64,000 bases of DNA from Macrostomum lignano (Eukaryota), in NCBI GenBank assembly GCA_002269645.1, contig NIVC01002295.1, positions 124,001 to 188,000 on the forward strand, in the 5' to 3' direction. The position numbers were made by a program, and so were the translations under genes. Shown here piece by piece: positions 1,130 through 60,200 of this stretch (position 1 is the stretch's first letter; each line of letters starts with the position of its first letter). A model generated the notes under the pieces. The model was not told the origin of the DNA. It searched no databases and saw only the letters and a list, made by a program, of their open reading frames with translations.

Positions 1130-1165
1130 GGGTTGGTGCAACGGGTGCGGGACCCACACCAACCC
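1117..1165 (+). promoter_or_regulatory. -1 programmed ribosomal frameshift signal (gag to pol)
   Basis: G GGA AAC heptamer at 1117-1123 in gag phase, 6-nt spacer, then stem GGGTTGGTG (1130-1138) / CACCAACCC (1157-1165). The pol ORF is in the -1 frame. Confidence 0.85.
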
Positions 1166-2919
1166 CAAGGAGCAATCCCGTGCTTCATGCTATTTTTATA
1201 CCTGGAGAGGCAAACGGCAAGCGGTGCCGCTGGCTGCTGGACACCGGAGCGCCGACCTCGCTGATCAGCGACGTTGCTTTGAGAGAGCTGGACGGTCGCT
1301 GCGAGCTGAAGCCGGCAGATGTCAGGCCTGTGTCCGTGGACGGCTCCGTTCTCGAGCTGTTAGGAAGCGTGAGCATTACGGTGCGACTCAGTCATCAGCT
1401 GCGCAGACAAATGGACGTGCTGGTGGTCAGAGGGATTCGCCCAAACTTCATCCTGGGGATGGATTTCGTGAGCAAGGCGGCCAGATCGCAGTTCAGCATC
1501 GACCAGGGTGCCAAGACAGTCGCATTCGATGGTGAGGCGGTTCCGTTCAGTGACTGCGATTCCAAGCAAGATGGCCCGCTGTCTTGTTGCTTGGTACCCA
1601 CAGTGATCATCGCCAGAGTTCAGGGCGCCGTCGTGGTACCGCCAAGGTCAGTTAAAGTGGTGGACGTGACGACCGAGACCAAGCAGGCACATGGCATCTT
1701 CGAGCCGTCACAGGAGTTCATCGATAGAATCGGAGTGCTGCCCGGCCGCGTGTTCGCGGTGTCTTCAGAGAGCGGCAAGATTCCGGTTCAGGTGTGCAAC
1801 CTCAGCTGCAGCCCGGTCACGCTGTTCTCCAACCAGAGCATCGGCACCTTCGAGAGCGCGGAGGTTATCAACGAGGACGAGGACGTGCACGAGTGGCGAG
1901 GCCCCGCAGACCAGTTCAACATCAATCCGGAGCTGCCGGAGGAGGACAGCAACCGTTTAGCAATGCTGCTGAGGGCATTTGCCGACGTGGTCTCAGTCCA
2001 TGAGTTCGACGTTGGTACGAGCAGCGCAGCGCAGCACAAGATTGAGCTGGACGACGGCGCTCGCCCGATTCGCCAACGGCCTCGGCGGGTGCCTCACGCC
2101 TTCAGGAGGCAAGTGGACGAGAAGCTGGAGCAGATGCGACAACACGGCGTCATCGAGCCCTCCACCAGCCCGTGGGCGAGCAACCTGATAATCGTCAGAA
2201 AGAAGAATAATGACATCCGAGTCTGTGTAGACTGGCGGGCGCTGAACAACCTCACAGTGAAGGACGCCCACCCGCTGCCGCATTTGCACCAAGCGCTCGA
2301 CTCCTTGGCTGGCTGCTCATGGTTCTCTACGATCGACATGCGCCAAGGCTTCCTTCAGGTGGAGGTCAGAGAGGAGGATCGGCCGTTGACAGCGTTCTAC
2401 ACTCAGAGCGGCCTGATGCAATTCCGCAAAATGGGATTCGGCATGTGCAACGCGCCTGCGACGTACCAGCGAATGATGGAGCTCATCATGACCGGCCTGA
2501 GCTGGGAGGAGGTCATCGCGTACATTGATGACCTGATCATCTTCAACAGGGACTTTGAGAACCACGTTCAGTCACTGTCCAAGGTGCTGCATCGACTGCG
2601 GTCTGCCAAGCTGAAGCTGAACCCAGGCAAGAGCTTCTTTGCCTACCGGAGCGTCACGTACCTGGGTCACCAAGTCTCTGAGAGCGGCATCGCACCTGCC
2701 GCGGAGAAGGTCGAGGCGATCAGGCGGATGCCGGAGCCGCAGTCTGAGGAGGATGTTCGACGCATCATCGGCATGCTCAGCTTCTACCGCAGGTTCGTGC
2801 CCAACTTCTCTGACATTGCCAAACCGCTGCATCACCTGGCTCAGAAAGGCGCGGGCGGCGGCTTCGTGTGGACGTCAGAGCATGCTGCGGTGCTGAACAA
2901 GTTGAAGGACGCGCTGACC
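1117..2919 (+). CDS. pol: Pol part 1: aspartic protease and reverse transcriptase
   Basis: LLDTGAPTSLI (protease), SPWASNLIIVRKK, CVDWRALN, FGMCNAPATYQ, YIDDL, VTYLGH (RT). The frame breaks at about 2918-2920. Confidence 0.93.
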
Positions 2920-4769
2920 AGGCCCCGGTGCTCCAGCTGCCCGACTTCAGCCGGCCTATCGTCATCAGCTGTGACAGCAGTGCTGTGGCCTTGGGTGCGG
3001 TGCTCAGCCAGGAGCGCGACGGCCAGGAGCTGCCAGTGGCCTACGCTTCCCGGACGCTGAGCAAGGCAGAGCGCAACTACAGCACCACGGACCGGGAGCT
3101 GCTCGCGATTGTTTGGAGCCTCAAGCAGTTCCGCATGTACCTGAGCAACAGCTGCAAGATCCAGGTGTTCACCGACCACAAGCCGATCACTGGGCTGCTC
3201 AACGCGAAGGAGCCAACCGGTCGGCTGGCACGTTGGCTACAGCTCATTCAGGAGTTCCCCCTGGAAATCCTGTACCGGCCCGGCAAGGAGAACATCGTGC
3301 CAGACACCCTCAGCCGAGCAGCGGCGGTGCAGTTCCAGATCGCTAATCTGCCTGACGAGCAGGACCAGGACCAGGTTCTGCACGCGGTTCGGCACGCGAT
3401 GCTCCAGCCCAACTTTCAAGTTCCGGCGGCGGTGAGTGCGTCGGTCCAGAAGCTGCTGCCCTGTCTGACGCTGTCACCGGACGGCGCACTGCTCCACAAC
3501 GGGTTGCCGGTGATCCCCCAGCACATGAGAGCGGAGCTGCTGCAACAGGCGCACGACCGGCCGAGCGCGGGTCACCTCGGTCAGCGGCGGGTGCTGCGGG
3601 CTCTGCGCGAGCGTTCCTGGTGGCCGGACATGCGCGAGGACGTGCGGGACTGGGTGCGGAGCTGCCTGGTCTGCCAACGACGCAAGGGAGCGCCAAAGCG
3701 AGCGCGCGCTGAGCTGGTGCGGCAGCCGCTACCGGCCAAGCCGTGGGCTGTCATGCAACTCGACATCAAGGGCCCACTGCCAGTCACTGAGTCTGGCAAG
3801 CGCTACATCATCTGCTTTGTCGACACATTTTCAAAGTGGGTGGAGGCGGCGGCCCTCAGCCAGATCGACGCCAAGACGGTAGCCGAGGCTCTGGTGACCT
3901 GTGTGGTGCTGCGGCACGGAGTTTCGGGGGTCGTGCACTCGGACCAAGGTCGCCAGTTTGAGGCCGAAGTTTTCAAGCAGACCTGCGCGCTGCTCGGAGC
4001 AGAAAAATCGAGGACCTCACCGTTTCACCCCAGCGGCAACGGGAACGTCGAGAGGTTCAATAGGACGCTGGGCAACATGCTCTCCGCATTCTGCTCAGAG
4101 AATCAGGCCAGCTGGGACGCCCTGCTGCCCTATGTCGTGTGGGCCTACAACAGCTCTGAGCACAGCTCCACGGGCGAGTCGCCGTTCAAAGTGCTACGCG
4201 GCATCGAGCCCAGACTGCTGGTCGACTTGGCACTCGGTGGGCAGCGCGACCAGCCGCAGGACTGCGCGGACCTGCAGGCGAGAATCAGGCGCGGCTTTCA
4301 GGTAGTGCGGGCGCACCTGCACACGGCCCAGAAATCGCAGCACGAGTTCTACAACCTAGGGGCAGAGACTACCGACTTCAAGACCGGTGACCGAGTGATA
4401 CTGACGCACCATGCGATGAAGCGCGGCCAGTGCAAGTCGCTGTCGAGCCGGTGGTCCGGCCCGTTCATCGTCCTTAAGAAGGTCAGCCCTGTGAACTACC
4501 GGCTGCAGGCTGTGAACGGCAGGCGCCGCTTGCTGGTCCACCACGACCGCTTGAAGCGCTTTATCGACCGACCGAATCTGAGCGGCAGGCCGCCAGCCAA
4601 GCCGGCCACCGAGGACGACTGTCAGAGCGTCGAGGACGCCGCGGGCCAGCTGGCCGGCCCGGACGCCTGGGAGCCGCTGCGCAACCTGGACGCGGCTGAA
4701 CCCGGCAACACGGTGCGCCGGTCGGGCAGGCAGCGCCGGCGGCCGGATTTTTACACGGCGACCTGTTGA
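2920..4769 (+). CDS. pol: Pol part 2: RT connection, RNase H and integrase
   Basis: APVLQLPDF, CDSSAVALGAVL, ELLAI, TDHKP (RNase H). HHCC finger, QLDIKGP / HSDQGRQF / VERFNRTL (DDE), GPF motif. No chromodomain seen. Confidence 0.93.
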
Positions 4770-12575: not shown

Positions 12576-15500
12576 CTAGTCGTCGCAGGACACGTGTGTA
12601 AACAAATAAGACATGCTCTCATTATTGTGTATGCGCCGGATGCCCTCAGCAACCAGCACAGACACGTCTACAGTTTTGATTTTGTGACACTGCATCTTCT
12701 GCACCTCGTGCGGCACTGTATTGGTGACCACCACTTCGTCTATGCGACAGTCGTGGGCGGCTATTTTAGTAGCGGCATCGGCGCTCAACAGGCCGTGGGT
12801 GGCCATCACGATGACTCGGTAGGCGCCACGGTCGTGCAGCAGCTCGGCGGCTCGTACAAACTGTTCAATATCGTCTACCATGTCCTCTACGATGATGGCG
12901 ATGCGACCGGAGACGTCGCCAACTAGCTGCATGTGAGCCTTCTCCTTGGCCACAGGCATTGGGAAGAATTTCACTCCGGCATGGTGCAGAGGTCTGGCGT
13001 TTGATTGCCGAAATTACAGCATGTTAATCAATGCATGACTAGCCCTCCTACGCAATCCCTGCCTTACCCTCATAGACAATCCCTGCCTTACCCTCATAGA
13101 CAATCCCTGCCTTACCCTCATAGACAATCCCTGCCTTACCCTCCTAGACAATCCCTGTCTTACCCTCCTAGACAATCCCTGCCTTACCCTCCTAGACAAT
13201 CCCTGTCTTACCCTCCTAGACAATCCCTGCCTTACCCTCCTAGACAATCCCTGCCTTACCCTCATAGACAATCCCTGCCTTACCCTCCTACGCAATCCCT
13301 GCCTTACCCTCCTAGACAATCCCTGCCTTACCCTCCTACGCAATCCCTGCCTTACCCTCCTAGACAATCCCTGCCTTACCCTCATAGACAATCCCTGCCT
13401 TACCCTCATAGACAATCCCTGCCTTACCCTCCTACGCAATCCCTGCCTTACCCTCCTAGACAATCCCTGCCTTACCCTCCTACGCAATCCCTGCCTTACC
13501 CTCCTAGACAATCCCTGCCTTACCCTCGTAGACAATCCCTGCCTTACCCTCCTAGACAATCCCTGCCTTACCCTCCTAGACAATCCCTGCCTTACCCTCA
13601 TAGACAATCCCTGCCTTACCCTCCTAGACAATCCCTGTCTTACCCTCCTAGACAATCCCTGCCTTACCCTCATAGACAATCCCTGCCTTACCCTCCTAGA
13701 CAATCCCTGCCTTACCCTCATAGACAATCCCTGCCTTACCCTCCTAGACAATCCCCGTCTTACCCTCCTAGACAATCCCTGTCTTACCCTCCTAGAGAAT
13801 CCCTGTCTTACCCTCCCGGTGGTACCTCCCTAGATAAAACTATCCAAATAAGAAGTCCAGCACTTGAGCAACAATAACGAAGAATGCAAAGTAAATAAAC
13901 AGCATATTCAACTCTACTAGCTATCTGATGAAACTATATAATAACTTTAACAATAAAGGCAGATTACTATAATTTATACACGCGAATAAGTCATCAGTGT
14001 AACAAAATAAAAATCCATAAAATGGCAAAGCCTATACTTGAATAACTGCATATGCTACATAGTAACTGTAACGAAATCCTCCCAACCTCATTAAGCAAAT
14101 ATAATAGTGAAAGTACAGACTTCAATAATTTAAGCACTATAGTTGCCATGCAATGCAGATAATACGTAAATACCTGTGGCCCAGACGGGCGGGCTGTTTT
14201 AATCCACGAGTTAGCCTGGAAATATTGGTTCGAAGTTTTACAGTGCTTAATGCACTCAATAGCTACTGACAGGGTTAAATACGTTTTGCTTAATAATTTT
14301 TAATGTGCTACATGTAAGTACAAACCATAGTACACAACTCGAAAAACAACAATTAAAAGCATATTGAATCTACAAACCCGGTACTTTGTGTATAAGTTTA
14401 TGTACTTTTAATGTCAATATATGTACTTTAAATCTAAAAATGTACTTTTAATCTAAAAATGTACTTTTAATCTAAATTTGTAGTTTGAATCTAATCGATG
14501 TACTTTTATTATAAATCTATGTACTTTTAAATCTAAATCTATGTACTTCGAGTCTAAATCTATGTACTTTGAGTATAAATCTATGTACTTTGAGTATAAA
14601 TCTATGTACTTTGAGTATAAATCTATGTACTTCGAGCATAAATCTATGTACTTTAAATCTAAATCCAGACACGCTCTCGCAGTTCGGAACGGATTGAAGG
14701 TCCCAGAGAAACACAGAATCAAAGCAATCTAACGCACAGAAAACTATTAGGACACTATTTGCAGAAGTACGATAACAAGCAAAACCAAAGCGCAAATTAA
14801 GATCCTGCCCGGATCTACCAGCTACTAACCTTCGCTCTTCGACAGCACCTACGCCGCTAGCGCCACCAACGCCACCAGACGCTCCGGCAGCTTCCAACTG
14901 ATCAGCCTGCTGCATGGGCGGCGGCGGCGAGTTCCTACCGTCGGCCTGTTCCGATTCCGAGTGCTCCTCGCCGTGAATAACGGCCAAGGGCAGCCGGAGC
15001 CGTTCAGAATAGGAAGCGGCCCGCTGCATAGCGGCGGCATTCCTGGCCACAATGACCGCATTGCGATAATCCGACACGTCGTTCATCACGTATTGGATTA
15101 GAAACGAAGACGCTCTCAGATTGTCAATAGGCACGCTGTAGAAGCCTTGAATCTCTTTCTTATGCAAGTCAACTGTGATCATGCGGCTTAGGCCGGTGTG
15201 ACAGAATAGCGCGGCTAATAGCCTACTAACGATTGCGCCGCGTTTTCTCATCTTACTCTGCTTACAGTAGGGCAGATAGGGCATGACAACGTTAATAGTG
15301 CGAGCGTCGGCGGTTTTACAAGCGTACATCATTATAATGAGCTCCATAATATCGTTATTAACGTTCTTAGTGCCAGTTTGAATAATAAACACGTCCCTAG
15401 ATCGCATTGTCTCGTTGATTTCAACGCTAGTCTCTCTGTTGCTTTTTTGTAGCACGGATACGCTGCCTAGAGGCACGGAGAGGTACCTGGATACCAGGCG

Positions 15501-15581
15501 GGCGAATTCCGGATGCGAGTTGCCGGCTAGAAGTACCATGCCTTTGGTTGGCATGCCCATTGCTGTGGCCTGGCGATTCAT
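12576..15581 (-). CDS. PRPSAP: Phosphoribosyl pyrophosphate synthetase-associated protein (non-catalytic)
   Basis: Exons 15581-14830 and 12993-12576, phase 2. Motifs [31 protein letters not shown] insertion, and [10 protein letters not shown] in place of the catalytic DDMIDTxGT; VVTNTVP. The start codon is uncertain. Confidence 0.92.
13040..13815. repeat. 24-bp intronic minisatellite
   Basis: Unit TAGACAATCCCTGCCTTACCCTCC, about 32 copies. Confidence 0.96.
14395..14660. repeat. 21-bp intronic minisatellite
   Basis: Unit AAATCTATGTACTTTGAGTAT. Confidence 0.9.
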
Positions 15582-15704
15582 TCTGCCGCTGCAAAGCATC
15601 AGTATTGAAGTTGGTTGTGCAGCTGCACTGTGCATATATTTCATACTGCATGCGTTTAGCACTGATTGCTAAGGACTATCTGTGCTCCAATGATAAAAAA
15701 ATGG

Positions 15705-26569: not shown

Positions 26570-27150
26570 AGATTTATGGGCTATGACTCAATGAGACTTT
26601 TTGGGACTTATGGGCTGCGACTCAATGAGACTTTTGAGCTGACTCAATCAGACTTTTGAGTTGACTCAATCAGACTTTTGAGTTGACTCAATCAGACTTT
26701 TGAGCTGACTCAATCAGACTTTTGAGTTGACTCAATCAGACTTTTGAGCTGACTCAATCAGACTTTTGAGTTGACTCAATCAGACTTTTGAGTTGACTCA
26801 ATCAGACTTTTGAGCTGACTCAATCAGACTTTTGAGCTGACTCAATCAGACTTTTGAGCTGACTCAATCAGACTTTTGAGTTGACTCAATCAGACTTTTG
26901 AGTTGACTCAATCAGACTTTTGAGTTGACTCAATCAGACTTTTGAGCTGACTCAATCAGACTTTTGAGTTGACTCAATCAGACTTTTGAGCTGACTCAAT
27001 CAGACTTTTGAGTTGACTCAATCAGACCTTTTGAGTTGACTCAATCAGACTTTTGGGACTTTTGAGCTATGAATCAATGATAGACTTTTGAGCTATGAAT
27101 CGATGATAGACTTTTGGGCTATGAATCGATGATAGACTTTTGGTCTATGA
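26570..27150. repeat. 22-bp minisatellite with internal inverted repeat
   Basis: Unit GACTCAATCAGACTTTTGAG(T/C)T; CTCAA/TTGAG pair within each unit. Confidence 0.95.
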
Positions 27151-28301
27151 CTCAATGATATTCCGAGGAAATCTACTTGTTTTCATATAAACTGCTAATA
27201 AAAATGCTTTTAATAACTTAGACGAAACAGAACCGACTGCCGAATCCAAAAATTGAAACGTGTACAAAACACACGCAAGTGTATATTATGTTTATTAATA
27301 TGAGTGACTGAGGATTTACTTTTTGCAAGTGAAATTACAGAAGGCTGGTGGGCGGGTGAAGCAAATAGCCAGGGAAATTAAATTTGCTGCATTTAATAGA
27401 AAAAGCACAATTTTTTCAACATGATCAACGAACATGACCGCTTCTGTCAAGCTTTAATAAAGATCAAGTTTACTGTCAATGCAGATTATTAGCTTAGTGT
27501 AGTAAGGAGGGCAATAGATATAAGATGTATATAATATGAATACGAGACAATAATTGGTTATAATGACATAATTAACAATTCAAAAGCATCAATTAATAAG
27601 CGGTCATCAGTGTATCATTTAAATTTCTAAACCTGTTAGAACTATAATTAGCGCCTCTAAGGACTTGATAACACTGAACTATGATCTTACTAAATCACTA
27701 TGCATTAACTAGCAAAGCTACAGAGACCACCGCAACTGCCGCTCTCTCTATCTGCCTGGTTCAACTGCATCAAAGAAGGGAAGAGAAAATATTAGTTATA
27801 AAAAACTCTTGACAGCCAGAAGAAGAAGATCTAAAAAACAGCAATAGAAATGGAAACAACTTAAACAGTTTAATTCAGTAGAGAAACCGCACGAACAGAC
27901 ACGGTAAACTGGGACAAACAATAGAAAAAAAATAGAAATTGCAGCACCGATACACGCTGTTTTCATAATTAATAATAATTAGGCTTGGGGGGACTGCTAA
28001 TGGCTTAACAATGGATAACTATATGAAGACATTGTACTGGCCAAAATATTACCGAGCCCCTCAATTAACATTTATAAATCAGTAATATTTGTAACAGCTA
28101 ATAAGAAGTGTGCGCTACTAGAACACAAACAACACCCCAGAAGCAAGCGCAAGGGACAGGGAGTTAACATTAACACTACAATTAGTTAAAAAGCATATTA
28201 TTACAATAGCTAGTCCTCAGAATTTGTTTATAGATTTAAGGCACAATTAAAGCAAACTAGATAAAGAAAAGGTGCGCCAACAATTCATAGAGACAGGCAA
28301 G

Positions 28302-28304
<3 letters not shown>

Positions 28305-28391
<87 letters not shown>

Positions 28392-28534
28392 GGCAGGCAG
28401 GAAGGCAGACAGACAGACAGACAGACAGGCAGACAGACAGACAGGCAGGAAGGCAGACAGACAGACAGACGGACAGACAGACAGGCAATAAGGCAGACAG
28501 ACAGACAGACACTAAGACAGACAGACAGGCAGGC

Positions 28535-28579
<45 letters not shown>

Positions 28580-28958
28580 GGCAGGCAGACAGACAGACAG
28601 GCAGGAAGGCAGACAGACAGACAGACAGACACTAAGACAGACAGACAGGCAGGCAGACAGACAGACAGAAAGACAGACAGACAGACAGGCAGACAGACAG
28701 ACAGGCAATAAGGCAGACAGACAGACAGACGGACAGACACTAAGACAGACAGACAGGCAGGCAGACAGACAGACAGACAGGCAGGCAGACAGACAGACAG
28801 AAAGACAGACAGACAGGCAGACAGACAGACAGGCAGGAAGGCAGACAGACAGACAGACAGGCAGACAGACAGACAGGCAATAAGGCAGACAGACAGACAG
28901 ACGGACAGACACTAAGACAGACAGACAGGCAGGCAGACAGACAGACAGACAGGCAGGC

Positions 28959-28991
<33 letters not shown>

Positions 28992-29174
28992 GGCAGACAG
29001 ACAGACAGGCAGGAAGGCAGACAGACAGACAGACGGACAGACACTAAGACAGACAGACAGGCAGGCAGACAGACAGACAGAAAGACAGACAGACAGACAG
29101 GCAGACAGACAGACAGGCAATAAGGCAGACAGACAGACAGACGGACAGACACTAAGACAGACAGACAGGCAGGC

Positions 29175-29215
<41 letters not shown>

Positions 29216-29266
29216 GGCAGGCAGGCAGGCAGGCAGACAGACAGAAAGACAGACAGGCAGGCAGGC

Positions 29267-29303
<37 letters not shown>

Positions 29304-29450
29304 GGCAGACAGACAGACAGACAGACAGACAGCCAGACAGGCAGGCAGGCAGACAGACAGACACTAAGACACTAAGACAGACAGACAGGCAGGCAGACAA
29401 ACAGACAGACAGACAGACAGGCAGACCAGACAGACAGAGACAAAGACAGA
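28305..29450. repeat. Compound (AGAC/AGGC)n microsatellite
   Basis: About 1.1 kb of tetranucleotide units with higher-order variant blocks. Confidence 0.97.
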
Positions 29451-31232: not shown

Positions 31233-33497
31233 TCAGTCCGCTGCACCAGCGGGCGGCAGTGCGGACAGGCGGAAGGCGAACACGCCAATTCTGAGGCCGC
31301 ACAGGCCGGCAGACGCGGAGGAGCTGGCCAGTGTAGAGCGAAGTTCCGCCGCCTCGCCGGCAACGCAAGCTGAAGCGGAGGATCTGGGAAAAGCGATGCG
31401 CAAGCAATTCTCGCCAGCTGTTGGACCGGTTAGCGCAGTAAGAAACGGTGCGCCGCAGGCTGTTAGAGATCGTTGAATAGCGCCATTGAGCTGAACAGAT
31501 TCAACTAAGCAGGGCCCGTCGGATAGCCAGCAGTGCATTGAAATTGGATCCGGGCAAGGCTGACGGCGCATCAAGGCCGAGCAGGGACGCTGACGGCAGT
31601 GCAGCAGGGCGACGGCGTGGCCATATTTGGAGGCCTCCTCTTCGGGCAGGCGAAAGCGCACCTGGCACACAAGGCCTGGCTGTGGTCGCAGGTAGCGTGG
31701 AGCAAATAATAGCGCCGCAGGAGCGAAGCCTAGCCTAGCCAGATGATCGGCCAGATGGTCGTGCATAGTCCGGCACAGATGGCCAACGTACAATTGCAGT
31801 ACGGCTGCACTTTGAGGACAGGCGCGCCTGGCGTACCGTAGCGGAGTTTGACCTTCGCAGGTTTCTACACCAAAATCGACACCGCCAAGGCTGCACAATG
31901 CGTCTACTAAATGCGGCTTGCGCAGCTTAATAGCACGCTGCAAAGTGGAATTGCCGGCCGGACAAAGCAAATTGGGATCGGCGCCGGCTAGCAACAGGCG
32001 ATGAACTAATGCCGGCGAGTCTCGTTCAACTGCCAGCATTAGCAGTGTTAGACCGGACTCGGAGGAGCGACAATCAATGTCTATAGTCTCTGATAGGTGA
32101 GCCACGGTGCCAGCCGTATCTAGTAACAAATCAACTATGCAAGCGTGACCGCGGGCCACGGCTAAACAGAGAAGCCGCTGCAAGTCTGCTATAGTCAGCT
32201 GCGGCTCCTGCTGGCTGACGGTCCGGCTAACAGCCGGCCAGTCGCCTCGTTCAACCGCTCGGCAGAGCAGCGGCCAGGATAGCGGAGGCGGCCGGTTTGG
32301 CGGCAGTCGGGCAGCCTGTCCGGCTAGGTGAGCGCGCAGCAGTTCAGCCTGATTAGCTACGTAGCGAAAGTCGGCCGCTGTCTCTTCGATTGGCGTCGTT
32401 GAGACCGACGCTGACGATGATGTCGACGGCTGCTGTTGTTGCTGCGGCGGAGGCGGCGGAGTCGGCGTCGAGGACACCGCCGAGGCGGTCGCGGACGCCG
32501 CTTTGTCTGATCGTTCATCGGAGGCGTCGCCAGCGGCTGAAGCTGCGGCCGAGGCCGAGGCAGAGGCTGTCGCAGCGGCGGTTGAATCTCGCTTAGCGGA
32601 ACCGAGCAAATCCGCCAGCAGCGGCGACTGATGCTGCGATGGCTTTGTTGATGACGCCGACGAAGCGGATTGCTGCGTAGGCGTTGGCGGTTGCACTGAC
32701 TCTCCAACCGTGGCGGCAGACGCTATTGTTGAGTCTTTCAAAACTTGTCCGCCGCTTCCAGTTGTTGCAGCGGCAGCCGAGACAGTCGGTTTGCCTTCGA
32801 TTTCTAAAGTGCTCGACGAGCCAATTGAGTTAGCGAAACTGCTGCCGCCTTCGGAATTGTTTGAATTGCCCTCCTCCCCGGTTGTGTCCTCGGCCGATGC
32901 GTCCTCGCTCTCTCGGCCGACGCTAACTCCGCTGCCACCGTTCAGCCGACGCCGGGATTTTGGCCGATTTTCGTCCAGACTGTCCACCAATTTGTTAGTC
33001 TTTGCCGACCCACCGCCAGTTGTTGGCAAATGCATTGCTGCCGCCGCTGCCGTTGTTGAGGAGCCTTGATCCCATCGCTTTGGCGCTGGACGCTTTCTGC
33101 TGCCGCTGCTATTGCTGCTGTTACTATTGCCGCCAGTCGATGCCCGATTGCTGCTGCTGCCGCTGCTGAGCTTACTGGCTCGAGCCGATCGGAAGGCTTG
33201 AATCATATCGGATACAACTGTTAAATTGTCCTCAGGCTCCCAGGTGTCATTCGATGGCGGATAATTTTTCCAGCGAACTTTAAAGTAAGACATGCCATTC
33301 TCAGTTTTCTCGGCTAGAATTTTGCCAACAACATATAAATCGTCGCCATTGTTTGATGCTGATGGCGGGGATGGTGCACTTTTAGTGCCAAGTCCTCCAC
33401 TGACGCCGCCCGCCTTGACTGCGGAGGCAGCTGCAACTGCCGCCACTGTGCCGGAGGCGGCGCCGCAATTGCTAGGCCGCCTGGCTGTTGTCTCCAT
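31233..33497 (-). CDS. MPHOSPH8: MPP8-like protein: chromodomain + ankyrin repeats + C-terminal beta domain (754 aa, intronless)
   Basis: Chromodomain YVVGKIL...VRWKNY...DTWEPEDNL. Ankyrin repeats (GLTLLMLA...GADPN, GQTPL). The C-terminus LSDGPCLVESVQLNG...GENCLRI...IGVFAFR parallels MPP8 RLCGPCSVQAVVLND...GPNKLFI...IGAYR as recalled. Confidence 0.8.
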   Translation of the reverse strand: METTARRPSNCGAASGTVAAVAAASAVKAGGVSGGLGTKSAPSPPSASNNGDDLYVVGKILAEKTENGMSYFKVRWKNYPPSNDTWEPEDNLTVVSDMIQAFRSARASKLSSGSSSNRASTGGNSNSSNSSGSRKRPAPKRWDQGSSTTAAAAAMHLPTTGGGSAKTNKLVDSLDENRPKSRRRLNGGSGVSVGRESEDASAEDTTGEEGNSNNSEGGSSFANSIGSSSTLEIEGKPTVSAAAATTGSGGQVLKDSTIASAATVGESVQPPTPTQQSASSASSTKPSQHQSPLLADLLGSAKRDSTAAATASASASAAASAAGDASDERSDKAASATASAVSSTPTPPPPPQQQQQPSTSSSASVSTTPIEETAADFRYVANQAELLRAHLAGQAARLPPNRPPPLSWPLLCRAVERGDWPAVSRTVSQQEPQLTIADLQRLLCLAVARGHACIVDLLLDTAGTVAHLSETIDIDCRSSESGLTLLMLAVERDSPALVHRLLLAGADPNLLCPAGNSTLQRAIKLRKPHLVDALCSLGGVDFGVETCEGQTPLRYARRACPQSAAVLQLYVGHLCRTMHDHLADHLARLGFAPAALLFAPRYLRPQPGLVCQVRFRLPEEEASKYGHAVALLHCRQRPCSALMRRQPCPDPISMHCWLSDGPCLVESVQLNGAIQRSLTACGAPFLTALTGPTAGENCLRIAFPRSSASACVAGEAAELRSTLASSSASAGLCGLRIGVFAFRLSALPPAGAAD

Positions 33498-34879
33498 TTA
33501 TAGAGAATTCCAAAATAAAGCGCTTAGGCCTGCTTTTTACGCATCGGAGCGATTGGCCAATGGTAATAAGGCGCGCGCCCGAACAGCAACTAAGACTGCT
33601 TCAAGATGGAAGAGCCACAAGGTCAATGAGCGTTTAAGAAAGTTCAGCTCAAGGATTCGACACCTAGTAGGTCAACTTGGAGGTGCGCAACTCCCAGAGT
33701 TATTCCAGAAATTCTTTATCAAGTTATGCGCCAGTGCATAAAGATAAGGTTGAATAAATAAACTTAATGCATATTGCTACAGCCATTTATAAAACCAATG
33801 TTTAAGCAAATAAAACCATAAATATTCAGGTTATACAAATTAAAGAATATTTGAGTCAAAGGTTTTATAAAATGTCACATTCACAGTGCTATATGGCATC
33901 CTGGATTCACACTCTGTCTAAGTGCAATTTGTTAGGAATAGTTATAAAAACTGTTTTATCTAGGGACATAAAAGTTAAACATAATACCAATATGAATAAT
34001 AAGATTTTCAATATTTAGATCAATGATTCAATGGTTGCATTTTATTTAAGCAAGTGACAATTACCATTCCTTTAATTTTATATGGTCTATGTTCATATAT
34101 GTCAACTTTGCTTTTGATTCTTCTACTTCTATCTTTGGTACTATGTCTCTTCTCTTCTCCTGTCTCTATTCTCCTGTTACTTCTATGAGCTATTTTCTAA
34201 TGCTTTTGCTCTTTTTCTTCTATTGCAAAAGTTCTATCCATGGTTGAACTAGTGGGCTTGACTTGGTATAACTCTATCCTTTAATACTTATTCTACTTTT
34301 AGCCATATCTTTTGAAGGAAATAACATTCTGTTGAAATTAAAAAAGCAATAAAACTGTAAAATACTTATCTATATAGTGATACATTGCATTTAATTATGA
34401 TTTTGCTATCAGTGTATGTGGAAAAATAGTGGGAAAAGGGTATGGATCAATTTTCCCACTATTTTTAGGATTTACCTTGTATTAAGGCAAAATGCTTTGT
34501 CATCTAGTACCATATCTGTATTTTTAGGTAGGCATTTTTGTGACTTACCTTGGCTAGGCCCCAGATCAGCTAGCTTGGCTAGGTATTAGGCATATACGAA
34601 ACTATATTTTATCCTATAGTTGTGCAATAAAAATTTCAGTTTTGTATTGTTTTTTTATTTTATAAGACCAAGCCAAAAATATATTTGCAAATAAAATGTT
34701 TTGTTCCTTTTTGAATCAAGTATATTTGTAAAAAATGTTGTATATAAATACTAAAATTTGTCACTTTTCTAAGACTAGATCAACAATATGAAAAATGATA
34801 TAGGTTAACTTTTAATTATATCTAAATATTTAGATTAGTCTAGGAATAGCTATTACTATATATTTAAATAACTATACCT

Positions 34880-35833: not shown

Positions 35834-36544
35834 CTATACCTATATTAATAGTTTGCGTACTATTCATATTAAAATCTTTCTTTTTATTAGAGGCCAAATT
35901 ATAAAAGAAACATTTATATAAGGGCCTATACCATATAGGCCCTAGTAATCAAATAGCCTTAGTATAGGTCTACTAATAATAATAATCTTATATGTTTGCA
36001 ATTGCTTATCTGCCAAATAGCTCAACCAATTTTCAATATTTCTTTACCAAAAGATGTCAAATGTGTCTAAATTGATATATAAATTTTAATGAGCTTTAGC
36101 TCATTGTTACAAGGATTAAATATTCAAAAAAAACTATATCATAGGGGCTTTTTAGTATATTTGCTTCTAAGCTAAATTTAACTGCACATTCAAATATTAG
36201 CAATAAAACTAAAAAAAATATAAAGACAATAAAAACCTCCTTCTAAGAGGGGATATGTCTCCAGTGTCTCCTTTTTTAGATATATCCCTGTTGGCCAGAC
36301 AATTACTTTATTTACATTGCATACCAATATGAGAAATGAGAAATAATTATTTGCTAGCTGGCAGACAGCTCTTTTTATAGCCTTAGCTAGTAACTAGCAA
36401 TCTTCGCCCCCCCCCCCGTTGGGGGACATCTGTATAGAATCTCTGCTCTCTACACGTAACAAAAAGATAGCCAAATAAAGCATTCACAAAGAAAATAGAC
36501 AAAATGCTTAAATGAAGTGCAATGCAAAAAGAAATCATCCCAAG

Positions 36545-37190
36545 ACAGCAAGCATCCCCCAGATAGCAAGTATCCCCCAGATTGCAAGCATCCCCCAGAT
36601 AGCAAGAATCCCCCAGATAGCAAACATCCCCCAAATTGCAAGCATCCCCCGGATAGCAAGCATCCCCCGGATAGCAAGCATCCCCCAGATTGCAAGCATC
36701 CCCCGGATAGCAAGCATCCCCTAGATTGCAAGCATCCCCCAGATAGCAAGCATCCCCCGGATAGCAAGCATCCCCCAGATTGCAAGCACCCCCCGGATAG
36801 CAAGCATCCCCCGGATAGCAAGCATCCCCCAGATAGCAAGCATCCCCAGGATAGCAAGCATCCCCCAGATAGCAAGCATCCCCCAGATAGTAAGCATCCC
36901 CCAGATAGCAAGCATCCCCCGGATAGCAAGCATCCCCCAGATTGCAAGCATTCTCTAGATAGCAAGCATCCCCCAGATAGCAAGCATCCCCCGGATAGCA
37001 AGCATCCCCCAGATTGCAAGTACCCCCCGGATAGCAAGCATCCCCAGGATAGCAAGCATCCCCCAGATAGCAAGCATCCCCCAGATAGCAAGCATCCCCA
37101 GGATAGCAAGCATCCCCCAGATAGCAAGCATCCCCCAGATAGTAAGCATCCCCCAGATAGCAAGCATCTTCCAGAGAGCAAGCAACCCCC
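36545..37190. repeat. 18-bp minisatellite
   Basis: Unit CCAGATAGCAAGCATCCC. Confidence 0.96.
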
Positions 37191-37204
37191 AAGACATTAA
37201 GTCA

Positions 37205-38375
37205 CATATATGTTTGACATGGTGGCTCTTAAATGTTTGATATGGTGGCTCTTAAATGTTTGACATGGTGGCACTTTAATGTTCTTCATGGTGGCTCTTT
37301 AATATTCTACATGGTGGCTCTTTTATGTTTGACATGGTGGCTTTTTAATCTTTGACATGGAGTCACGTATATGTTTGACATAGTGCTTATTTTATGTTTG
37401 GCATAGTGGCTCTTTTATGTTTGACATAAAGCCACATATATGTTTGACATGGTGGCTCTTTAATGTTCTTCATGGTGGTTTTTTAATATTCTACATGGTG
37501 GCTCTTTTATGTTCGACATGGTGGCTATTTTTTGTTCTACATGGTAACTCTTATGTTTGATATGGTGGCTTTTTAATGTCTGACATGGTGGCTCTTCTAT
37601 GTTTGACATGGTGGCTCTTTAATTTTGAACATGGTGGCTCTTTTATGTTTGACACAGTGGCTCCTTAATGTTCGATAAAGTGGCTATTTAATGTTTGACA
37701 TGGTGGCTCTTCAATGTTTTACATGGTGGCTCTTTAATGTTCGAAATGGTGGCTCTTTAAAGTTTGATATAAAGTCACATATATGTTTGACATGGTGGCT
37801 CTTAAATGTTTGACATGGTGACTCTTAAATGTTTGACATGGTAGCTCTTAAATTTTTGACATGGTGGCTCCTCAATGTTTTGACATGGTGGCTCTTAAAT
37901 GTTTTGACATGGTGGCTCTTAAATGTTTGACATGGTGGCTCTTTAATGTTCTTCATGGTGGCTCTTTAATATTCTACATGGTGGCTTTTTAATATTCTAC
38001 ATGGTGGCTCTTTTATGTTTGACATGGTGGCTGTAATTTGTTCTACATGGTAACTCTTTTATGTTTGATACGGTGGCTTTTTAATGTCTGACATGGTGGC
38101 TCTTTTGTGTTTGACATTGTGGCTCTTTTATGTTTGACATGGTGGCTCTTTAATTTTTAACATGGTGGCTCTTTAATGTTTGACACGGTGGCTCTTTAAT
38201 GTTTGACATGGTGGCTTTTTAATCTTTGACATGGAGTCACGTATATGTTTGACATAGTGCTTTTTTATGTTTGGCATAGTGGCTCTTTTATGTTTGACAT
38301 GGTAACTCTTTTTATATTTGAAATGTTGGCTCTTTAATGTTCAACATGGTAGCTCTTCTATGTTTGACATTGCAC
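37205..38375. repeat. Degenerate ~21-bp minisatellite
   Basis: Unit TTTGACATGGTGGCTCTTTAATG-like, about 55 copies. Confidence 0.94.
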
Positions 38376-51855: not shown

Positions 51856-52680
51856 TCACTCTGCGGCCTTCTCCGTTTCCATGGGAACGTCCTTCAGCTG
51901 CGGCTGCTCCCGAGCTGCCGGAGCCTCGAACGGCGCCTCGATGCACAGCCGGCCATCGTGGCTGAGCTTGCTCACCACCTGGTCCAGCTTGGTGCCGTCG
52001 GGCAGCTGGTAGATTCGCTCCAGCCGCTTGTGGACCCGCTGCCCACCGGCCTCCTCCTTGTGCTCCGCCTCCACCAGCACGCAGTCGCCCTGCTGTCGCA
52101 CGCGAATCTCGTCCGGCTTGAACTCGCGCACCGACAGCTCCGCCTTGAACCGCTTGCTGCCATCGTCCGCCTCCACCAGCTGGCCGGACCCCTCAGACTG
52201 CAGGTCGCCTCGCAGCAGGCCGCGCAGCTCGTCCCACACGGAGTCGCCCTGCGGTTTCTGCTGCTGCTGCTGCTGCTCCTGCTGCTTCAGCTGCTGCTGC
52301 TTCTGCTGCTCTTTGAACGGCGCCTGCAGCACCAGCATGCCGTCCCGGGTGAAGCCGCTGTTCAGCTTCTCTGCGTCCACTTCCTCCGGCAGCTCCACCG
52401 TCCGCTTCACCTCCGTCACGTCCTCGCCGTTCTCCAGCCGCGCCACCACCCGCACCTTCCGCTCCTCCCGCTTCACCGACACGTCCTTCGGCGAGAAGCC
52501 GCGAAGGTCCACAGTCCGGCTCCACTGACGCGGTCGCCTCGGACCTCTGTGCCGCAGCAGCTGCACCAGCGGGTCATACTCCGGCGTCAGCCAGTCGTCC
52601 AGCTCGCTCATGGCTGCCACGAGCGGCAGAGAGTGCGAGAACGGCGTGTACACGTTGCTCGGTGCGATCCACAGAGACAT
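51856..52680 (-). CDS. Small heat-shock protein with two alpha-crystallin domains (p40/Tsp36-like)
   Basis: VDLRGFSPKDVSV...RTVELPEEVD...GMLVLQAP and LSVREFKPDEIRV...RIYQLPDG...DGRLCIEAP, joined by a poly-Q linker. Likely start is the ATG at 52680, downstream of the TATA box. Confidence 0.92.
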   Translation of the reverse strand: MSLWIAPSNVYTPFSHSLPLVAAMSELDDWLTPEYDPLVQLLRHRGPRRPRQWSRTVDLRGFSPKDVSVKREERKVRVVARLENGEDVTEVKRTVELPEEVDAEKLNSGFTRDGMLVLQAPFKEQQKQQQLKQQEQQQQQQKPQGDSVWDELRGLLRGDLQSEGSGQLVEADDGSKRFKAELSVREFKPDEIRVRQQGDCVLVEAEHKEEAGGQRVHKRLERIYQLPDGTKLDQVVSKLSHDGRLCIEAPFEAPAAREQPQLKDVPMETEKAAE

Positions 52681-52802
52681 GCTTGCTGTGTCGCTTGTAA
52701 ATGATAGAGTTTGGCGATTGATTCGCTTTGCTTGAGATTGCTTTGCTTGCGGTTGCTTTGTGTGCTCCAATCCTGCCTCACTCTCGGATCCAGCTGTCTC
52801 GC

Positions 52803-52875
52803 TTTTATAGACTGGCACTGAGGAAGCTTCTCGAATTTTCTTGCCCACTGACTTCATTCTGGAAATTTCTAGAAA
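52803..52875 (-). promoter_or_regulatory. Heat-shock promoter: TATA box plus two four-unit HSEs
   Basis: TATAAAA at 52809-52803; GAAgcTTCtcGAAttTTC at 52823-52840; TTCtgGAAatTTCtaGAA at 52857-52874. Confidence 0.88.
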
Positions 52876-57200: not shown

Positions 57201-60200
57201 TGCAGATATTTTAGATTTTGATCTAGAACTGGAGCAGAAAGTGGTTCCAAAGTGTGTAAATATGGCTGTCATAGGTGCAAGCAAGCTTACCTAGGTGGAG
57301 TAGCTAGCCAGTGGTGAGATAGAAAGCATCAGTGAAATTCCCCAGCTTGTCTAGGCTAGAGGTAGAGCTATAGTAGAGAGCAAAAAATGTTAGAAGACGT
57401 TTTTCTTCTTCTAAGCATTGGCAGAGTTGGCCAAGAGGATGCTGCAAGCTTTAGCATAAGTGTTAGACTGGCAAACATTGAGTGCGCCAAGCTTCCAGAG
57501 TGCCAAGCCAGAGAGAAGACTGCAGAGTGCCTTGAGCTTATAGATATCACTAGGTGTGGCTTTGTCAATATGGTGAATAAATTCCACTTAGAATCTAGGG
57601 AATTTAATTAATCCATGCTATTGAAAGTTAGTAGCTAGACTTTCTATTAGATGGCCAAGCTAATAAGGCTAGCTAGATTGCAGTCTTTAGGAGCAAGCAG
57701 CATGACCAATGCCAATGTTGATGTTGCATTAGCTGCAAGCTACTGCATGAGCTATTGGTTTGTTGCATCATATTAGTCATTATAGTCAAGAGGGCACTAA
57801 TATTGATTGAGGCAGTGGGAGCTATTACAAGGATCAAAGTTGTAAAAGGAGCAGTGGGAAGAGTAGATGTTGTGGCTACTGAAGCAGTTGGTAGCAGGTC
57901 ATTGGCTTTGCTATGCAGCTGCTCCACTTTAATAGAGGCTATACTGTGGTAATTCTGGGATTATTAGATCTGGTTGCTAGATAGGTCAGTTCTTAATCAC
58001 ATGATGACCATGGTAATGCTGACATTGCTACCAATTTGTCAAAGTTGACAATAAACTAATATGAGAACAAGCAGTTAGTAGAGAAAGAATTAGTAGAAGA
58101 GAAACAGAAGTGACAGGCTAAAGCTAAAGCCACAAGTTGAACTTGTATTTATATTAACATAGCAAAGGGTAGCTAAAATGTCTGGCAAATTAACAGTTGG
58201 GATTGTCTATAGGGAAAAGCATAATAGACAAAGGGAGTCAATTAACTGAAAAGTATGCAGCTGAATTGCAGAATAGAAAATACAAATATTTGGAAGATAG
58301 AAATCCAATAGCACATTTTCTAAGGGTCAGATAATATCAAATTTTCAAGATTTTCAAGACTTTAGATTTCTACTTTTGAGATAATTGAAATTCAATTAAT
58401 ATTCAAGATTAAGTGTAATTAGCATCTAGCCATAGTCCAGAAGAAGGCATGTATAGTGGAAATTTCTCACGAAATTTGGCATATATATTGGCATTCAAAA
58501 AGTGATTTTGGGCTTTTGGTATACAAATTTAATATCTTGGTCTATGATATGCACCAAAAATTAAAAAATCATATTATTGATAATAGTAACAATAGTCATC
58601 CATGCATTATAATGATAAAATTTAAGAACTATTTGATGCAAAATTCATTCCCATATTTTCTATAAAGTAATGATTTAAAATTGTAACAAAAATCACTAGT
58701 ATAGTATAGTAGTCTAGTAATACTGTTATCAAATCTATTGATTTGAAGCTTTGCTTAAATAATATACTCAGCATACATTGGCATATACAAAAAAAATTTT
58801 TGGGGGGTACATATAGACTGTTCTAAACTATAGGTATCTAATAAGCCTATTTACACTATTATTTGCACTATTTTTCAATGTAATTATTGTTACTTATTAA
58901 ATGTATATAATATAGTGATGATAATAAAAAGAAAAACGATTTGATTGTTTTAATTATTGAGCTTAAAGATTGAGCTTGAGATTTATGATTTAAGTATAAT
59001 AATATTGGCAAGGCTCCAGTTTGTTTTGCAATATTATTTTCAAGTTTGAATTGGTGCCACAATATAGTGCCTTTGAGCACTAGATAGAAGTAAATGGAGC
59101 AATAGCTGCAGTAGTAGATAGTGCAATAGATAGGGCAGTAACAGTAGCAATTGATAGAGCAGTAGATAAAATGATAGAGTAATAGATAGTGATAAAGTAG
59201 TAGATGAGCTAGAGGCTAAAAGATTTTCTGATATCATTTCCTATCCTTTTTGGCCAGATATTTTTTATACCATGGTACTATGTTGCAGCACTAATTCAAA
59301 CTTTAAAGTAATATCAGGAAGCAAACTAGGTGATTGCCATATCTGAAGAATATCATAGTTACAAAGTCTGTAGTTGCAAATATTGACTTTTTTCAAGATC
59401 TTGAAACCAATATCAAGATTTTAAAAAGTGCCAAGATCTTGATGATCAAGATTAAGATTGAGATCTTGTCCAACCCCTAGTAAAAACTTTTTTCCTTTGA
59501 CAATATAATTTTTGGACTCTTAATTTTTGTCATAACTTTTTTACAGGTAGATTAGGATGCAATTTGAAATTTTTCTTAATCTCTTAAGTCTGAAACTATG
59601 TTTCAAAATAATATTTTATATTCAGATGATTGATAGGGCTAAAATAAAGCTCAAGACAAGCTTTTTCATAATCAAAATATATATTCTCAATCTCTACATG
59701 TCTCTATTCAATTTTGGAATCAGGATTAGAATCCCATCCTAGCTCTAACTCTAATGTGTAACTTACTTAAGTAAATTTTTTAAAAATAGGATAAGATCAT
59801 GATCTTGCCCAATCCTAAAGATTTTGATCCCATCTAACCTCTGTATATTCTTAGACATTAAAAGAAGATAAGGGTCCCAAAATACCACCCATGATGCTAG
59901 GTTAGCACAAAATTTTAAAAAGGATGCAACACATTCTTTTCTTTCTACTTATCAATAATAGTAATATATAAGCATAGTAAATAATTGCCTTATCGATTGG
60001 ATCCATCTTAATGCAACCCAGGCGGACGGTTTTGGCCTGGCCTCGGCTGTAGCCGACATTGACTCGGCCGCAGGCGCGCTGAACCTGAACGGTCTAACCT
60101 TCGAGGACGAAGACGACGCCGAGAATGCCGTCGGTGTTGGCGCTGGCGGCGCGTTGTACACCCGCGACCTGCCTGAGCACGCCTGCGCCTACTGCGGCAT

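What the first reader, a model, noticed from the sequence alone, without database searches (positions are those of the whole stretch)
31233..33497. MPP8-like (HUSH complex) protein with full domain architecture in an invertebrate
Seen: an N-terminal chromodomain with aromatic-cage residues intact (Y, W, Y), a long disordered linker, ankyrin repeats and a C-terminal segment paralleling the MPP8 CTD motifs. Established: in mammals MPP8 reads H3K9me3 and its ankyrin/CTD region binds TASOR to silence retroelements, and HUSH is usually described as vertebrate-centred. Inference: this TE-rich flatworm-like genome may encode a HUSH-like silencing pathway.
Basis: partly seen in the sequence, partly recalled or inferred. 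Interest (0 to 1): 0.7.

Follow-up and report, generated by a model that had tools for sequence, protein, structure and literature searches.

The report
Divergent MPP8-like chromatin reader in flatworm
A gene of the flatworm Macrostomum lignano encodes a protein built like human MPP8, the methyl-histone-reading subunit of the HUSH transposon-silencing complex, but its partner-binding end resembles MPP8 only in predicted fold, and whether the worm has a working HUSH complex was not tested.

Summary
The ORF is real: window 31233-33497 (-), 754 aa, no introns. It is 100% identical to Macrostomum lignano hypothetical protein BOX15_Mlig014748g4.

- **Chromodomain (aa 51-107):** it passes Pfam, and its best solved-structure match is the human MPP8 chromodomain (44% identity), ahead of HP1/CBX/CDYL. 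The aromatic cage is intact (Y55, W76, Y79).
- **Linker (about 270 aa):** Ser/Ala/Thr/Gly-rich, with low hydrophobic content.
- **C-terminal half:** the predicted structure has five ankyrin helix pairs, an extra-long last helix, and a nine-strand beta domain. This matches the published crystal structure of the MPP8 C-terminal domain (8QFB).
- **Fold search:** Foldseek puts 8QFB first for the ankyrin+tail model (E 2e-11). It also puts 8QFB first for the tail alone (E 2e-3, probability about 1, next hit probability 0.23).

Caveats: both models are low-confidence (pLDDT 55-60), TM-scores are about 0.4, and the tail is only about 10% identical to MPP8. HMMER finds no relative of the tail outside Macrostomum among 1.84 billion proteins.

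An old paralog has the same architecture, and the folded domains are under purifying selection.

TASOR and Periphilin could not be searched in this genome. TASOR-like proteins are already reported across Metazoa, so this is a new, very divergent member of a known family. The HUSH function is inferred.

The parts
31233..33497 (-). Complete intronless coding sequence (754 aa plus stop at 31233-31235) of the MPP8-like protein, M. lignano BOX15_Mlig014748g4
   Evidence: ORF list. 100% identity over 100% of the length to the NCBI protein. The gene range on the contig equals the ORF length. An in-frame TAA lies immediately upstream of the ATG.
33177..33347 (-). Chromodomain, aa 51-107. Aromatic cage Y55 (33333-33335), W76 (33270-33272), Y79 (33261-33263)
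   Evidence: Pfam PF00385, E 3.2e-12. Best PDB sequence hits are human MPP8 chromodomain chains 9h77/3qo2/3lwe (E 2e-10 to 2e-9, 40-43 bits), against HP1 at 35 bits. 44% identity over 61 aa and cage mapping.
32370..33176 (-). Low-complexity, probably disordered linker, aa 108-376. It contains two basic patches conserved in the paralog: SRKRPAPKRW (aa 133-142) and RPKSRRRLNG (aa 178-187). These are candidate nuclear localisation signals (inference).
   Evidence: Composition. No Pfam hit. Highest non-synonymous divergence and many indels against the paralog. Conserved islands are visible in alignment A1.
32277..32369 (-). Pre-ankyrin segment, aa 377-407, with a motif conserved between the paralogs (F..., Q-x-E-L-x-R-A-H-L, P-L-S). 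It sits where human MPP8 residues 536-562 bind the TASOR SPOC domain. The equivalence is inferred, not shown.
   Evidence: Invariant columns F377, Q383, E385, L386, R388-L391 and P405-S407 in A1. The position of the human SPOC-binding segment comes from PMC7618375.
31734..32276 (-). Five ankyrin repeats, aa 408-588. The last helix (aa 563-588) is about twice the normal length.
   Evidence: Pfam Ank_2/Ank/Ank_3 over aa 471-559. The AF2 model has helix pairs 14-23/26-35, 42-55/58-71, 91-97/101-109, 124-130/134-143 and 158-165/169-194 in fragment numbering (fragment residue 1 = aa 395). pLDDT is 77-91 for most of repeats 1-3 and falls to 40-48 around repeat 5. Matches the 8QFB description.
31236..31733 (-). 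C-terminal beta-rich domain, aa 589-754. Nine predicted strands; candidate PINIT-like beta-sandwich. It carries a low-complexity insert (about aa 705-733) that the paralog lacks.
   Evidence: Tail-only model with nine strands. Foldseek top four hits are 8QFB chains, probability 0.99-1.0, and the next hit has probability 0.23. 49% identity to the paralog with saturated synonymous sites. No HMMER relatives outside Macrostomum.

Best explanation
This is a highly diverged flatworm member of the MPP8 family, a modular chromatin adaptor.

- The N-terminal chromodomain uses its Y55/W76/Y79 cage to bind trimethyl-lysine in an H3K9me3-type (ARKS-like) context.
- A long disordered linker with basic patches tethers it to the C-terminal module.
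- That module is rigid: five ankyrin repeats, an elongated last helix, and a PINIT-like beta-sandwich. By analogy with human MPP8, it docks onto the SPOC-DomI region of a TASOR-like scaffold. This would anchor a HUSH-like silencing complex on methylated chromatin and help maintain or spread repression of transposons.

Shown here: the ORF, the chromodomain and its cage, the ankyrin repeats, the predicted topology, the specific fold match to 8QFB, the presence of a second paralog, and purifying selection.

Inferred: methyl-lysine binding, binding to a TASOR-like partner, and any role in transposon silencing.
For: 1. The chromodomain is significant, and its closest solved relative is MPP8 (43 bits against 35 for HP1). 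The cage is intact.
2. The C-terminal half is predicted as five ankyrin repeats, a double-length last helix and nine strands. This is the arrangement described for the MPP8 C-terminal domain crystal structure (PMC7618375).
3. For the ankyrin+tail model, Foldseek against 350,542 PDB chains ranks the four 8QFB chains first. E is 2e-11 to 6e-10 over about 350 columns. Generic ankyrin proteins follow at E about 7e-7 over about 165 columns.
4. The tail-only model contains no ankyrin repeat, yet it again ranks the four 8QFB chains first (E 1.6e-3 to 5e-3, probability 0.99-1.0, about 200 columns). All other hits are noise.
5. An ancient paralog (P0002, 46% identity, synonymous sites saturated) keeps the same architecture. 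dN/dS is about 0.16-0.21 in the chromodomain, ankyrin repeats and long helix. Non-synonymous divergence is lower in the folded parts (0.34-0.52) than in the linker (0.68).
6. TASOR-like proteins with the MPP8-binding SPOC-DomI module are reported in invertebrates (PMC10578480), so a partner is plausible.
Against: - Both models are low-confidence: mean pLDDT 60 and 55, with the tail mostly 40-65, built from only two sequences.
- TM-scores to 8QFB are only 0.37-0.44. RMSD is 7-19 A, so there is no good rigid superposition.
- There is no sequence-level link of the ankyrin+tail region to MPP8. phmmer never reports 8QFB.
- An exhaustive profile search with the tail finds only Macrostomum proteins.
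- The chromodomain's margin over HP1 is modest (about 8 bits), and it was measured only against solved structures.
- The validated human interface residues (F548, R741, F813) could not be mapped.
- No TASOR or Periphilin search of this genome was possible.
Confidence: 0.62

Rival explanations
1. It is a lineage-specific chromodomain-ankyrin chromatin reader that shares the MPP8 ground plan by common descent or by convergence. It no longer works in a HUSH-type complex, or never did. Its ankyrin/beta module would bind a different, flatworm-specific partner.
For: - The tail has no detectable sequence relative outside Macrostomum among 1.84 billion representatives. It is about 10% identical to MPP8, so the interface could be entirely rewired.
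- MPP8 has been lost in other protostome models, Drosophila and Caenorhabditis. HUSH components are therefore dispensable in some lineages.
- No partner was identified here.
Against: - The full three-part architecture, including the unusual long helix plus beta-sandwich that is specific to MPP8 among PDB entries, is retained in two anciently diverged paralogs under purifying selection.
- TASOR-like SPOC-DomI proteins are reported across invertebrates.
Confidence: 0.3
2. It is a non-functional retrocopy or an annotation artefact. On this view the intronless ORF is a decaying processed pseudogene of the intron-containing paralog.
For: The window gene has no introns, whereas the paralog has four canonical GT-AG introns.
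Against: - The 754-codon frame is fully open even though divergence from the paralog is saturated at synonymous sites.
- Non-synonymous change is concentrated in the linker and suppressed in the folded domains.
- The identical protein is encoded on a second contig that is about 98% identical.
- No poly(A) tract or other retroposition scar is visible.
Confidence: 0.04
3. It is a transposon-derived chromodomain, of the kind found at the C-terminus of chromovirus integrases, fused to host ankyrin repeats.
For: The window is rich in transposable elements. A Ty3/gypsy-type pol lies at 1024-4769.
Against: - The chromodomain is N-terminal.
- It has a complete three-residue cage.
- It matches cellular MPP8, HP1, CBX and CDYL chromodomains best.
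- No integrase, RT or other transposon domain is present in the ORF.
Confidence: 0.02

Closest known systems
Vertebrate MPP8 (MPHOSPH8), the H3K9me3-reading subunit of the HUSH complex; C-terminal domain crystal structure 8QFB, chromodomain structures 3LWE/3QO2/9H77
   Same: - Same order of parts: N-terminal caged chromodomain, long disordered linker, five ankyrin repeats, elongated last helix, nine-strand beta-sandwich at the C-terminus.
- The chromodomain is 44% identical to the human one.
- 8QFB is the top structural match for the C-terminal module, with and without the ankyrin repeats.
   Different: - It is shorter (754 aa; human MPP8 runs to residue 860).
- The C-terminal half has no HMMER-detectable similarity to MPP8, and the tail is about 10% identical.
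- The first cage residue is Tyr rather than Phe.
- The beta domain carries a low-complexity insert (about aa 705-733).
- The gene is intronless and duplicated into two anciently diverged paralogs.
- The partner and the function are untested.
HP1/CBX and CDYL chromodomain proteins
   Same: Canonical chromodomain with a three-residue aromatic cage. Significant sequence matches at 27-35 bits.
   Different: - No chromoshadow domain, Pc box or enoyl-CoA hydratase-like domain.
- These proteins score lower than MPP8.
- They have no ankyrin repeats or beta-sandwich.
[quoted passage not shown]
   Same: The human MPP8 beta-sandwich is described as PINIT-like in the literature. The flatworm tail matches that MPP8 domain at the fold level.
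   Different: - No PIAS or Siz1 structure appears among the top 50 Foldseek hits of the tail model.
- No Pfam PINIT hit and no SP-RING domain.
- It is therefore not an E3 ligase.
S. pombe RITS subunit Chp1 (chromodomain + SPOC + DomII/PIN)
   Same: It is a chromodomain reader that anchors an RNA-linked heterochromatin complex. The literature proposes it as an analogue of HUSH.
   Different: In RITS the chromodomain and SPOC lie in one polypeptide, and there is no ankyrin/PINIT-like module. The flatworm protein follows the split, MPP8-type arrangement.

Membership tests
MPP8 (MPHOSPH8) family | N-terminal chromodomain with an intact aromatic cage | tested here: met
   Pfam Chromo, E 3e-12. Y55/W76/Y79 align to F/W/Y of the human MPP8 chain.
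MPP8 (MPHOSPH8) family | The chromodomain is closer to MPP8 than to other chromodomain families (reciprocal-best-type test) | tested here: inconclusive
   Among solved structures, MPP8 chains are the top three chromodomain hits (40-43 bits), against HP1 at 35, CBX5 at 35 and CDYL at 32. The margin is modest. No phylogeny or proteome-wide reciprocal search could be run, because the chromodomain word search returned nothing.
MPP8 (MPHOSPH8) family | Long intrinsically disordered linker between the chromodomain and the C-terminal domain | tested here: met
   About 270 aa that are S/A/T/G-rich with 11.5% hydrophobic residues. No domain hit. Indel-rich and fast-evolving against the paralog. No disorder predictor was run.
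MPP8 (MPHOSPH8) family | Five ankyrin repeats whose last helix is about twice as long and runs along the following domain | tested here: met
   Five helix pairs, with the last helix 26 residues long (aa 563-588), in the AF2 model. A helix of 28 residues appears in the tail-only model. Matches the 8QFB description. Confidence is lower for repeat 5.
MPP8 (MPHOSPH8) family | C-terminal PINIT-like beta-sandwich that superposes on 8QFB residues 741-860 | tested here: inconclusive
   Nine predicted strands. 8QFB chains are the only high-probability Foldseek hits of the tail-only model (E 1.6e-3, probability 1.0). However, TM is about 0.4, RMSD is 7-8 A, and the model pLDDT is 55.
MPP8 (MPHOSPH8) family | Detectable sequence homology of the C-terminal domain to MPP8 | tested here: not met
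   phmmer of aa 395-754, 570-754, 395-480 and 540-640 against PDB sequences never lists 8QFB (only the top 60 of 226 hits were visible for aa 395-754). A tail-profile hmmsearch of 1.84e9 proteins finds only Macrostomum. This lowers certainty of orthology. It does not exclude remote homology in a fast-evolving lineage.
MPP8 (MPHOSPH8) family | Binds TASOR SPOC-DomI through the C-terminal domain; a TASOR-like gene is present in the same genome | not testable with these tools
The literature reports TASOR-like proteins in invertebrates in general, but I found no statement about flatworms.
HP1/CBX family | Chromoshadow domain (HP1) or C-terminal Pc box (Polycomb CBX) | tested here: not met
   No chromoshadow or other CBX-type domain appears in Pfam at E <= 1.
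Siz/PIAS SUMO E3 ligases | PINIT motif/domain together with an SP-RING zinc finger | tested here: not met
   No PINIT or zf-MIZ Pfam hit. No PIAS or Siz1 structure among the top 50 fold matches.

The most novel reading that the evidence does not exclude
The MPP8/TASOR-type HUSH module predates the protostome-deuterostome split and survives, in strongly diverged form, in Macrostomum. Two anciently separated MPP8 paralogs, one intron-containing and one intronless, would serve distinct HUSH-like complexes, analogous to vertebrate HUSH and HUSH2. M. lignano supports RNAi and transgenesis, so it would become the first invertebrate model in which intron-dependent self/non-self discrimination by HUSH could be tested.
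Probability: 0.3. Interest if true: 0.65.

Novelty: new member of a known kind. Interest (0 to 1): 0.42.

Why it matters
HUSH is studied almost only in mammals, and MPP8 is said to be missing from flies and nematodes. No genetically tractable invertebrate model therefore exists for it.

A genuine MPP8 relative in M. lignano would do two things. This flatworm has established transgenesis (PMC5730564, listed).
- It would add the reader subunit to the evidence, so far based on TASOR-like proteins (PMC10578480), that the machinery is ancient in animals.
- It would offer a system to ask whether recognition of intronless invaders is ancestral.

The extreme divergence of the C-terminal domain also shows how such orthologues escape sequence-based annotation. 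The protein is labelled only 'hypothetical protein' / 'Chromo domain-containing protein'.

The finding remains an annotation-level inference until partners and function are shown.

Tried and rejected
1. Whole-protein word-index search. It returned only the protein itself and one paralog, because the low-complexity linker dominated the word candidates.
2. The same search with aa 395-754. It was swamped by generic, mostly bacterial ankyrin proteins and was uninformative.
3. The same search with the chromodomain alone. No candidates came back. This used the last of the three searches, so no named MPP8 orthologues and no TASOR query could be obtained.
4. Exhaustive hmmsearch with the tail profile. 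Only Macrostomum proteins matched. Three further hits (P0124-P0126) are artefacts of many weak repeat matches in PKD or tandem-repeat proteins.
5. phmmer of sub-segments against PDB sequences, to pull out 8QFB and map the interface residues. No hit to 8QFB, so F548, R741 and F813 could not be mapped.
6. Two metagenome scans with the paralog alignments. No relatives.
7. Supplementary tables of the M. lignano genome and transcriptome papers and of the DUF3715 paper, searched for gene ids and HUSH gene names. Nothing was held or found.
8. Retrogene hallmarks around the ORF. No poly(A) tract or target-site duplication was evident, so the origin of the intronless state is unresolved.
9. Rejected readings: a transposon-derived chromodomain, a pseudogene, and an HP1/CBX or PIAS family member. 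Reasons are given under the rival explanations and the membership test.
Full report
**What is there.** The finding's coordinates delimit exactly one open reading frame, window 31233..33497 on the minus strand, 754 codons. An in-frame TAA lies immediately upstream of the ATG. The protein is 100% identical over its full length to NCBI 'hypothetical protein BOX15_Mlig014748g4 [Macrostomum lignano]', which UniRef calls 'Chromo domain-containing protein'. M. lignano is a free-living flatworm (Platyhelminthes, Macrostomorpha). The window is contig NIVC01002295.1 of assembly GCA_002269645.1. A second contig, about 98% identical in the matching stretches, encodes the identical protein. The annotated gene range equals the ORF length, so the coding sequence has no introns.

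**Checking the observation, domain by domain.**
- *Chromodomain.* Pfam finds a Chromo domain at aa 55-103 (E 3e-12, 46.6 bits against a cut-off of 25.1) and ankyrin repeats around aa 471-559 (Ank_2, E 2e-12).
- *Closest chromodomain.* Against all PDB chain sequences, the three best chromodomain matches are human MPP8 constructs (9H77, 3QO2, 3LWE; 40-43 bits, E 2e-10 to 2e-9). Drosophila HP1 (35 bits), CBX5 (35) and CDYL (32) follow. Identity to the human MPP8 chromodomain is 44% over 61 aligned residues.
- *Cage.* Y55, W76 and Y79 align with F, W and Y of the human chain.
- *Linker.* Residues 108-395 are 21% Ser, 16% Ala, 9% Thr and 9% Gly. Only 11.5% are hydrophobic or aromatic, against 34% in the C-terminal half. 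There is no domain hit.
- These three parts of the observation are confirmed.

**The C-terminal module.** The published crystal structure of the human MPP8 C-terminal domain (8QFB, residues 563-860) has five ankyrin repeats. Its last helix is twice as long as the others and runs along a tightly packed beta-sandwich (strands beta1-beta9), described as PINIT-like. [quoted passage not shown] Residues 536-562, just upstream, add a SPOC contact (PMC7618375).

An AlphaFold2 model of aa 395-754 used only the paralog as alignment support. It gives five helix pairs, a 26-residue last helix (aa 563-588) and then a run of strands. Mean pLDDT is 60. It is high (77-91) for most of repeats 1-3 but 40-60 from repeat 5 onward. 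A model of aa 556-754 alone gives a 28-residue helix followed by nine strands (mean pLDDT 55).

Foldseek against 350,542 PDB chains gave two results.
Designed and natural ankyrin proteins follow at E about 7e-7 over about 165 columns.
- For the tail-only model, which has no ankyrin repeat, the same four 8QFB chains are again first (E 1.6e-3 to 5e-3, probability 0.99-1.0, about 200 columns). Every other hit has probability 0.47 or less.

The topology and the specificity of the match therefore support an MPP8-type C-terminal domain.

**Limits of that evidence.**
- TM-scores are only 0.37-0.44. RMSD is 19 A for the full module and 7-8 A for the tail. This is what poorly packed, low-confidence models would give, but it is not a convincing superposition.
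- At the sequence level nothing links the C-terminal half to MPP8. phmmer with aa 395-754, 570-754, 395-480 or 540-640 never reports 8QFB. Foldseek's identity for the tail is 10-11%.
- An exhaustive profile search with the tail against 1.84 billion representative proteins finds only Macrostomum proteins. It also returns three artefactual repeat-protein hits.
- Two metagenome scans found no relatives.
It holds only for predicted fold. The validated human interface residues (F548, R741, F813) could not be mapped, for the same reason.

**Is it a functional gene?** M. lignano has a second gene with the same architecture, P0002 (BOX15_Mlig020555g1, 780 aa). It has Chromo and Ank Pfam hits and the same tail. 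The two are 46% identical overall, and synonymous sites are saturated (pS 0.7-0.9), so the duplication is old. Even so:
- Non-synonymous divergence is 0.34 in the chromodomain, 0.42 in the ankyrin repeats, 0.34 in the long helix and 0.52 in the beta region. It is 0.68 in the linker and 0.93 in the N-terminal extension.
- dN/dS is about 0.16-0.21 wherever it can be computed.

Both copies are therefore maintained by purifying selection on exactly the three folded parts.

Short conserved islands in the linker include two basic patches (SRKRPAPKRW, RPKSRRRLNG). A pre-ankyrin motif (F377, Q-x-E-L-x-R-A-H-L, P-L-S) also stands out. It lies where human MPP8 contacts the TASOR SPOC domain. That equivalence is my inference.

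**Most likely mechanism.** The protein is best read as a very diverged MPP8-family chromatin adaptor.
- The caged chromodomain reads a trimethyl-lysine mark of the H3K9me3 type.
- The flexible linker, with probable nuclear localisation signals, connects it to a rigid ankyrin/beta-sandwich platform.
- That platform docks a scaffold protein, most plausibly a TASOR-like DUF3715-SPOC-DomI protein.

Such proteins have been reported in invertebrates and 'throughout metazoa' (PMC10578480). Methyl-lysine binding, the partner, and any role in transposon silencing are inferences from the human system. None was tested here, and I could not search this genome for TASOR or Periphilin.

The main rival is that the ankyrin/beta module has been rewired to another partner and the protein acts outside any HUSH-like complex. 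The total lack of sequence conservation in the tail keeps this open. Pseudogene, annotation-artefact and transposon-derived readings are disfavoured by the selection pattern, by the domain content, and by the cellular-type chromodomain.

**Comparison with what is known, and novelty.** The literature I could read states that MPP8 has no orthologue in Drosophila or Caenorhabditis. It usually introduces HUSH as a vertebrate system. It also shows that TASOR-like proteins are widespread in invertebrates and that HUSH resembles fission-yeast RITS in domain logic. I found no paper that mentions MPP8 together with flatworms. The M. lignano supplementary tables held here list none of the HUSH gene names or these gene ids.

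The gene is already in public databases, but only as a hypothetical or chromo-domain protein. I therefore rate it a new, strongly diverged member of a known family, and not a new kind of system. Its value is as a lead: M. lignano supports transgenesis and knock-down, so a HUSH-like pathway could be tested there.

**Context noticed in the window.**
- The gene sits between simple tandem arrays: (AGAC)n at 28291-29450, and 18-, 22- and 23-bp-period arrays at 36539-37191, 26619-27055 and 37210-38370.
- A Ty3/gypsy-type pol region lies at 1024-4769. PRPS-like, tandem-HSP20 and UPF1 coding segments lie elsewhere.
- The window copy is intronless, whereas its paralog has four canonical GT-AG introns. 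This is compatible with an old retroposition or with intron loss. No poly(A) scar remains.

**Verdict.** I put about 0.6 on family membership with the inferred docking role. The HUSH-pathway claim is untested. Interest is moderate.

Noticed in passing
window 31233-33497 versus L003 5780-11745: The window gene is a single uninterrupted ORF. Its ancient paralog (P0002, contig NIVC01001341.1) has five exons and four canonical GT-AG introns of 591, 1175, 339 and 1518 bp. One of the two may descend from a retrocopy, or all introns were lost. No poly(A) tract or target-site duplication is visible next to the window copy.
   Followed up: partly
L001 (NIVC01003195.1) versus window 21233-43497 (= L002, NIVC01002295.1): A second assembly contig carries an identical protein in a region that is 89-99% identical in blocks, with indels. 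It is either the other haplotype or a recent segmental or whole-genome duplicate.
   Followed up: partly
window 1024-4769 (+): Ty3/gypsy-type LTR-retrotransposon pol region. One ORF has aspartyl protease and reverse transcriptase; an overlapping second ORF has RNase H, integrase zinc-binding and core domains, and a Tf2-type SH3/C-terminal domain. The split into two overlapping frames suggests a frameshift. LTRs and gag were not looked for.
   Followed up: no
window 28291-29450: About 290 copies of the tetranucleotide AGAC (84% matches), lying about 1.8 kb beyond the 3' end of the gene. It produces the long spurious 'CLSV...' ORFs in all frames and the strong AT skew of that interval.
   Followed up: yes
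window 26619-27055, 36539-37191, 37210-38370: Three minisatellite arrays with periods of 22, 18 and 23 bp (20, 36 and 50 copies) flank the gene on both sides. The 23-bp array is the more degenerate (79% matches).
   Followed up: no
window 14517-15662 (-), 51856-52857 (-), 60154-61674 (+): Other coding segments: a ribose-phosphate pyrophosphokinase (PRPS)-like ORF, an ORF with two HSP20/alpha-crystallin domains, and fragments of a UPF1 RNA helicase (zinc-binding and 1B domains) that run towards the window end.
   Followed up: no
P0123 (670 aa) versus P0002 (780 aa): A shorter database variant of the paralog lacks part of the acidic linker and a stretch of the beta domain (about 30 residues, including a predicted strand). 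It is probably an alternative or erroneous gene model from another copy.
   Followed up: no
window 33540-33565 (minus-strand upstream of the ATG): A palindromic CCAAT/ATTGG element (ccattggccaatcgc) lies about 50 bp upstream of the start codon, and a TATAA lies directly before the ATG. These are possible core-promoter elements. No transcript data were available.
   Followed up: no
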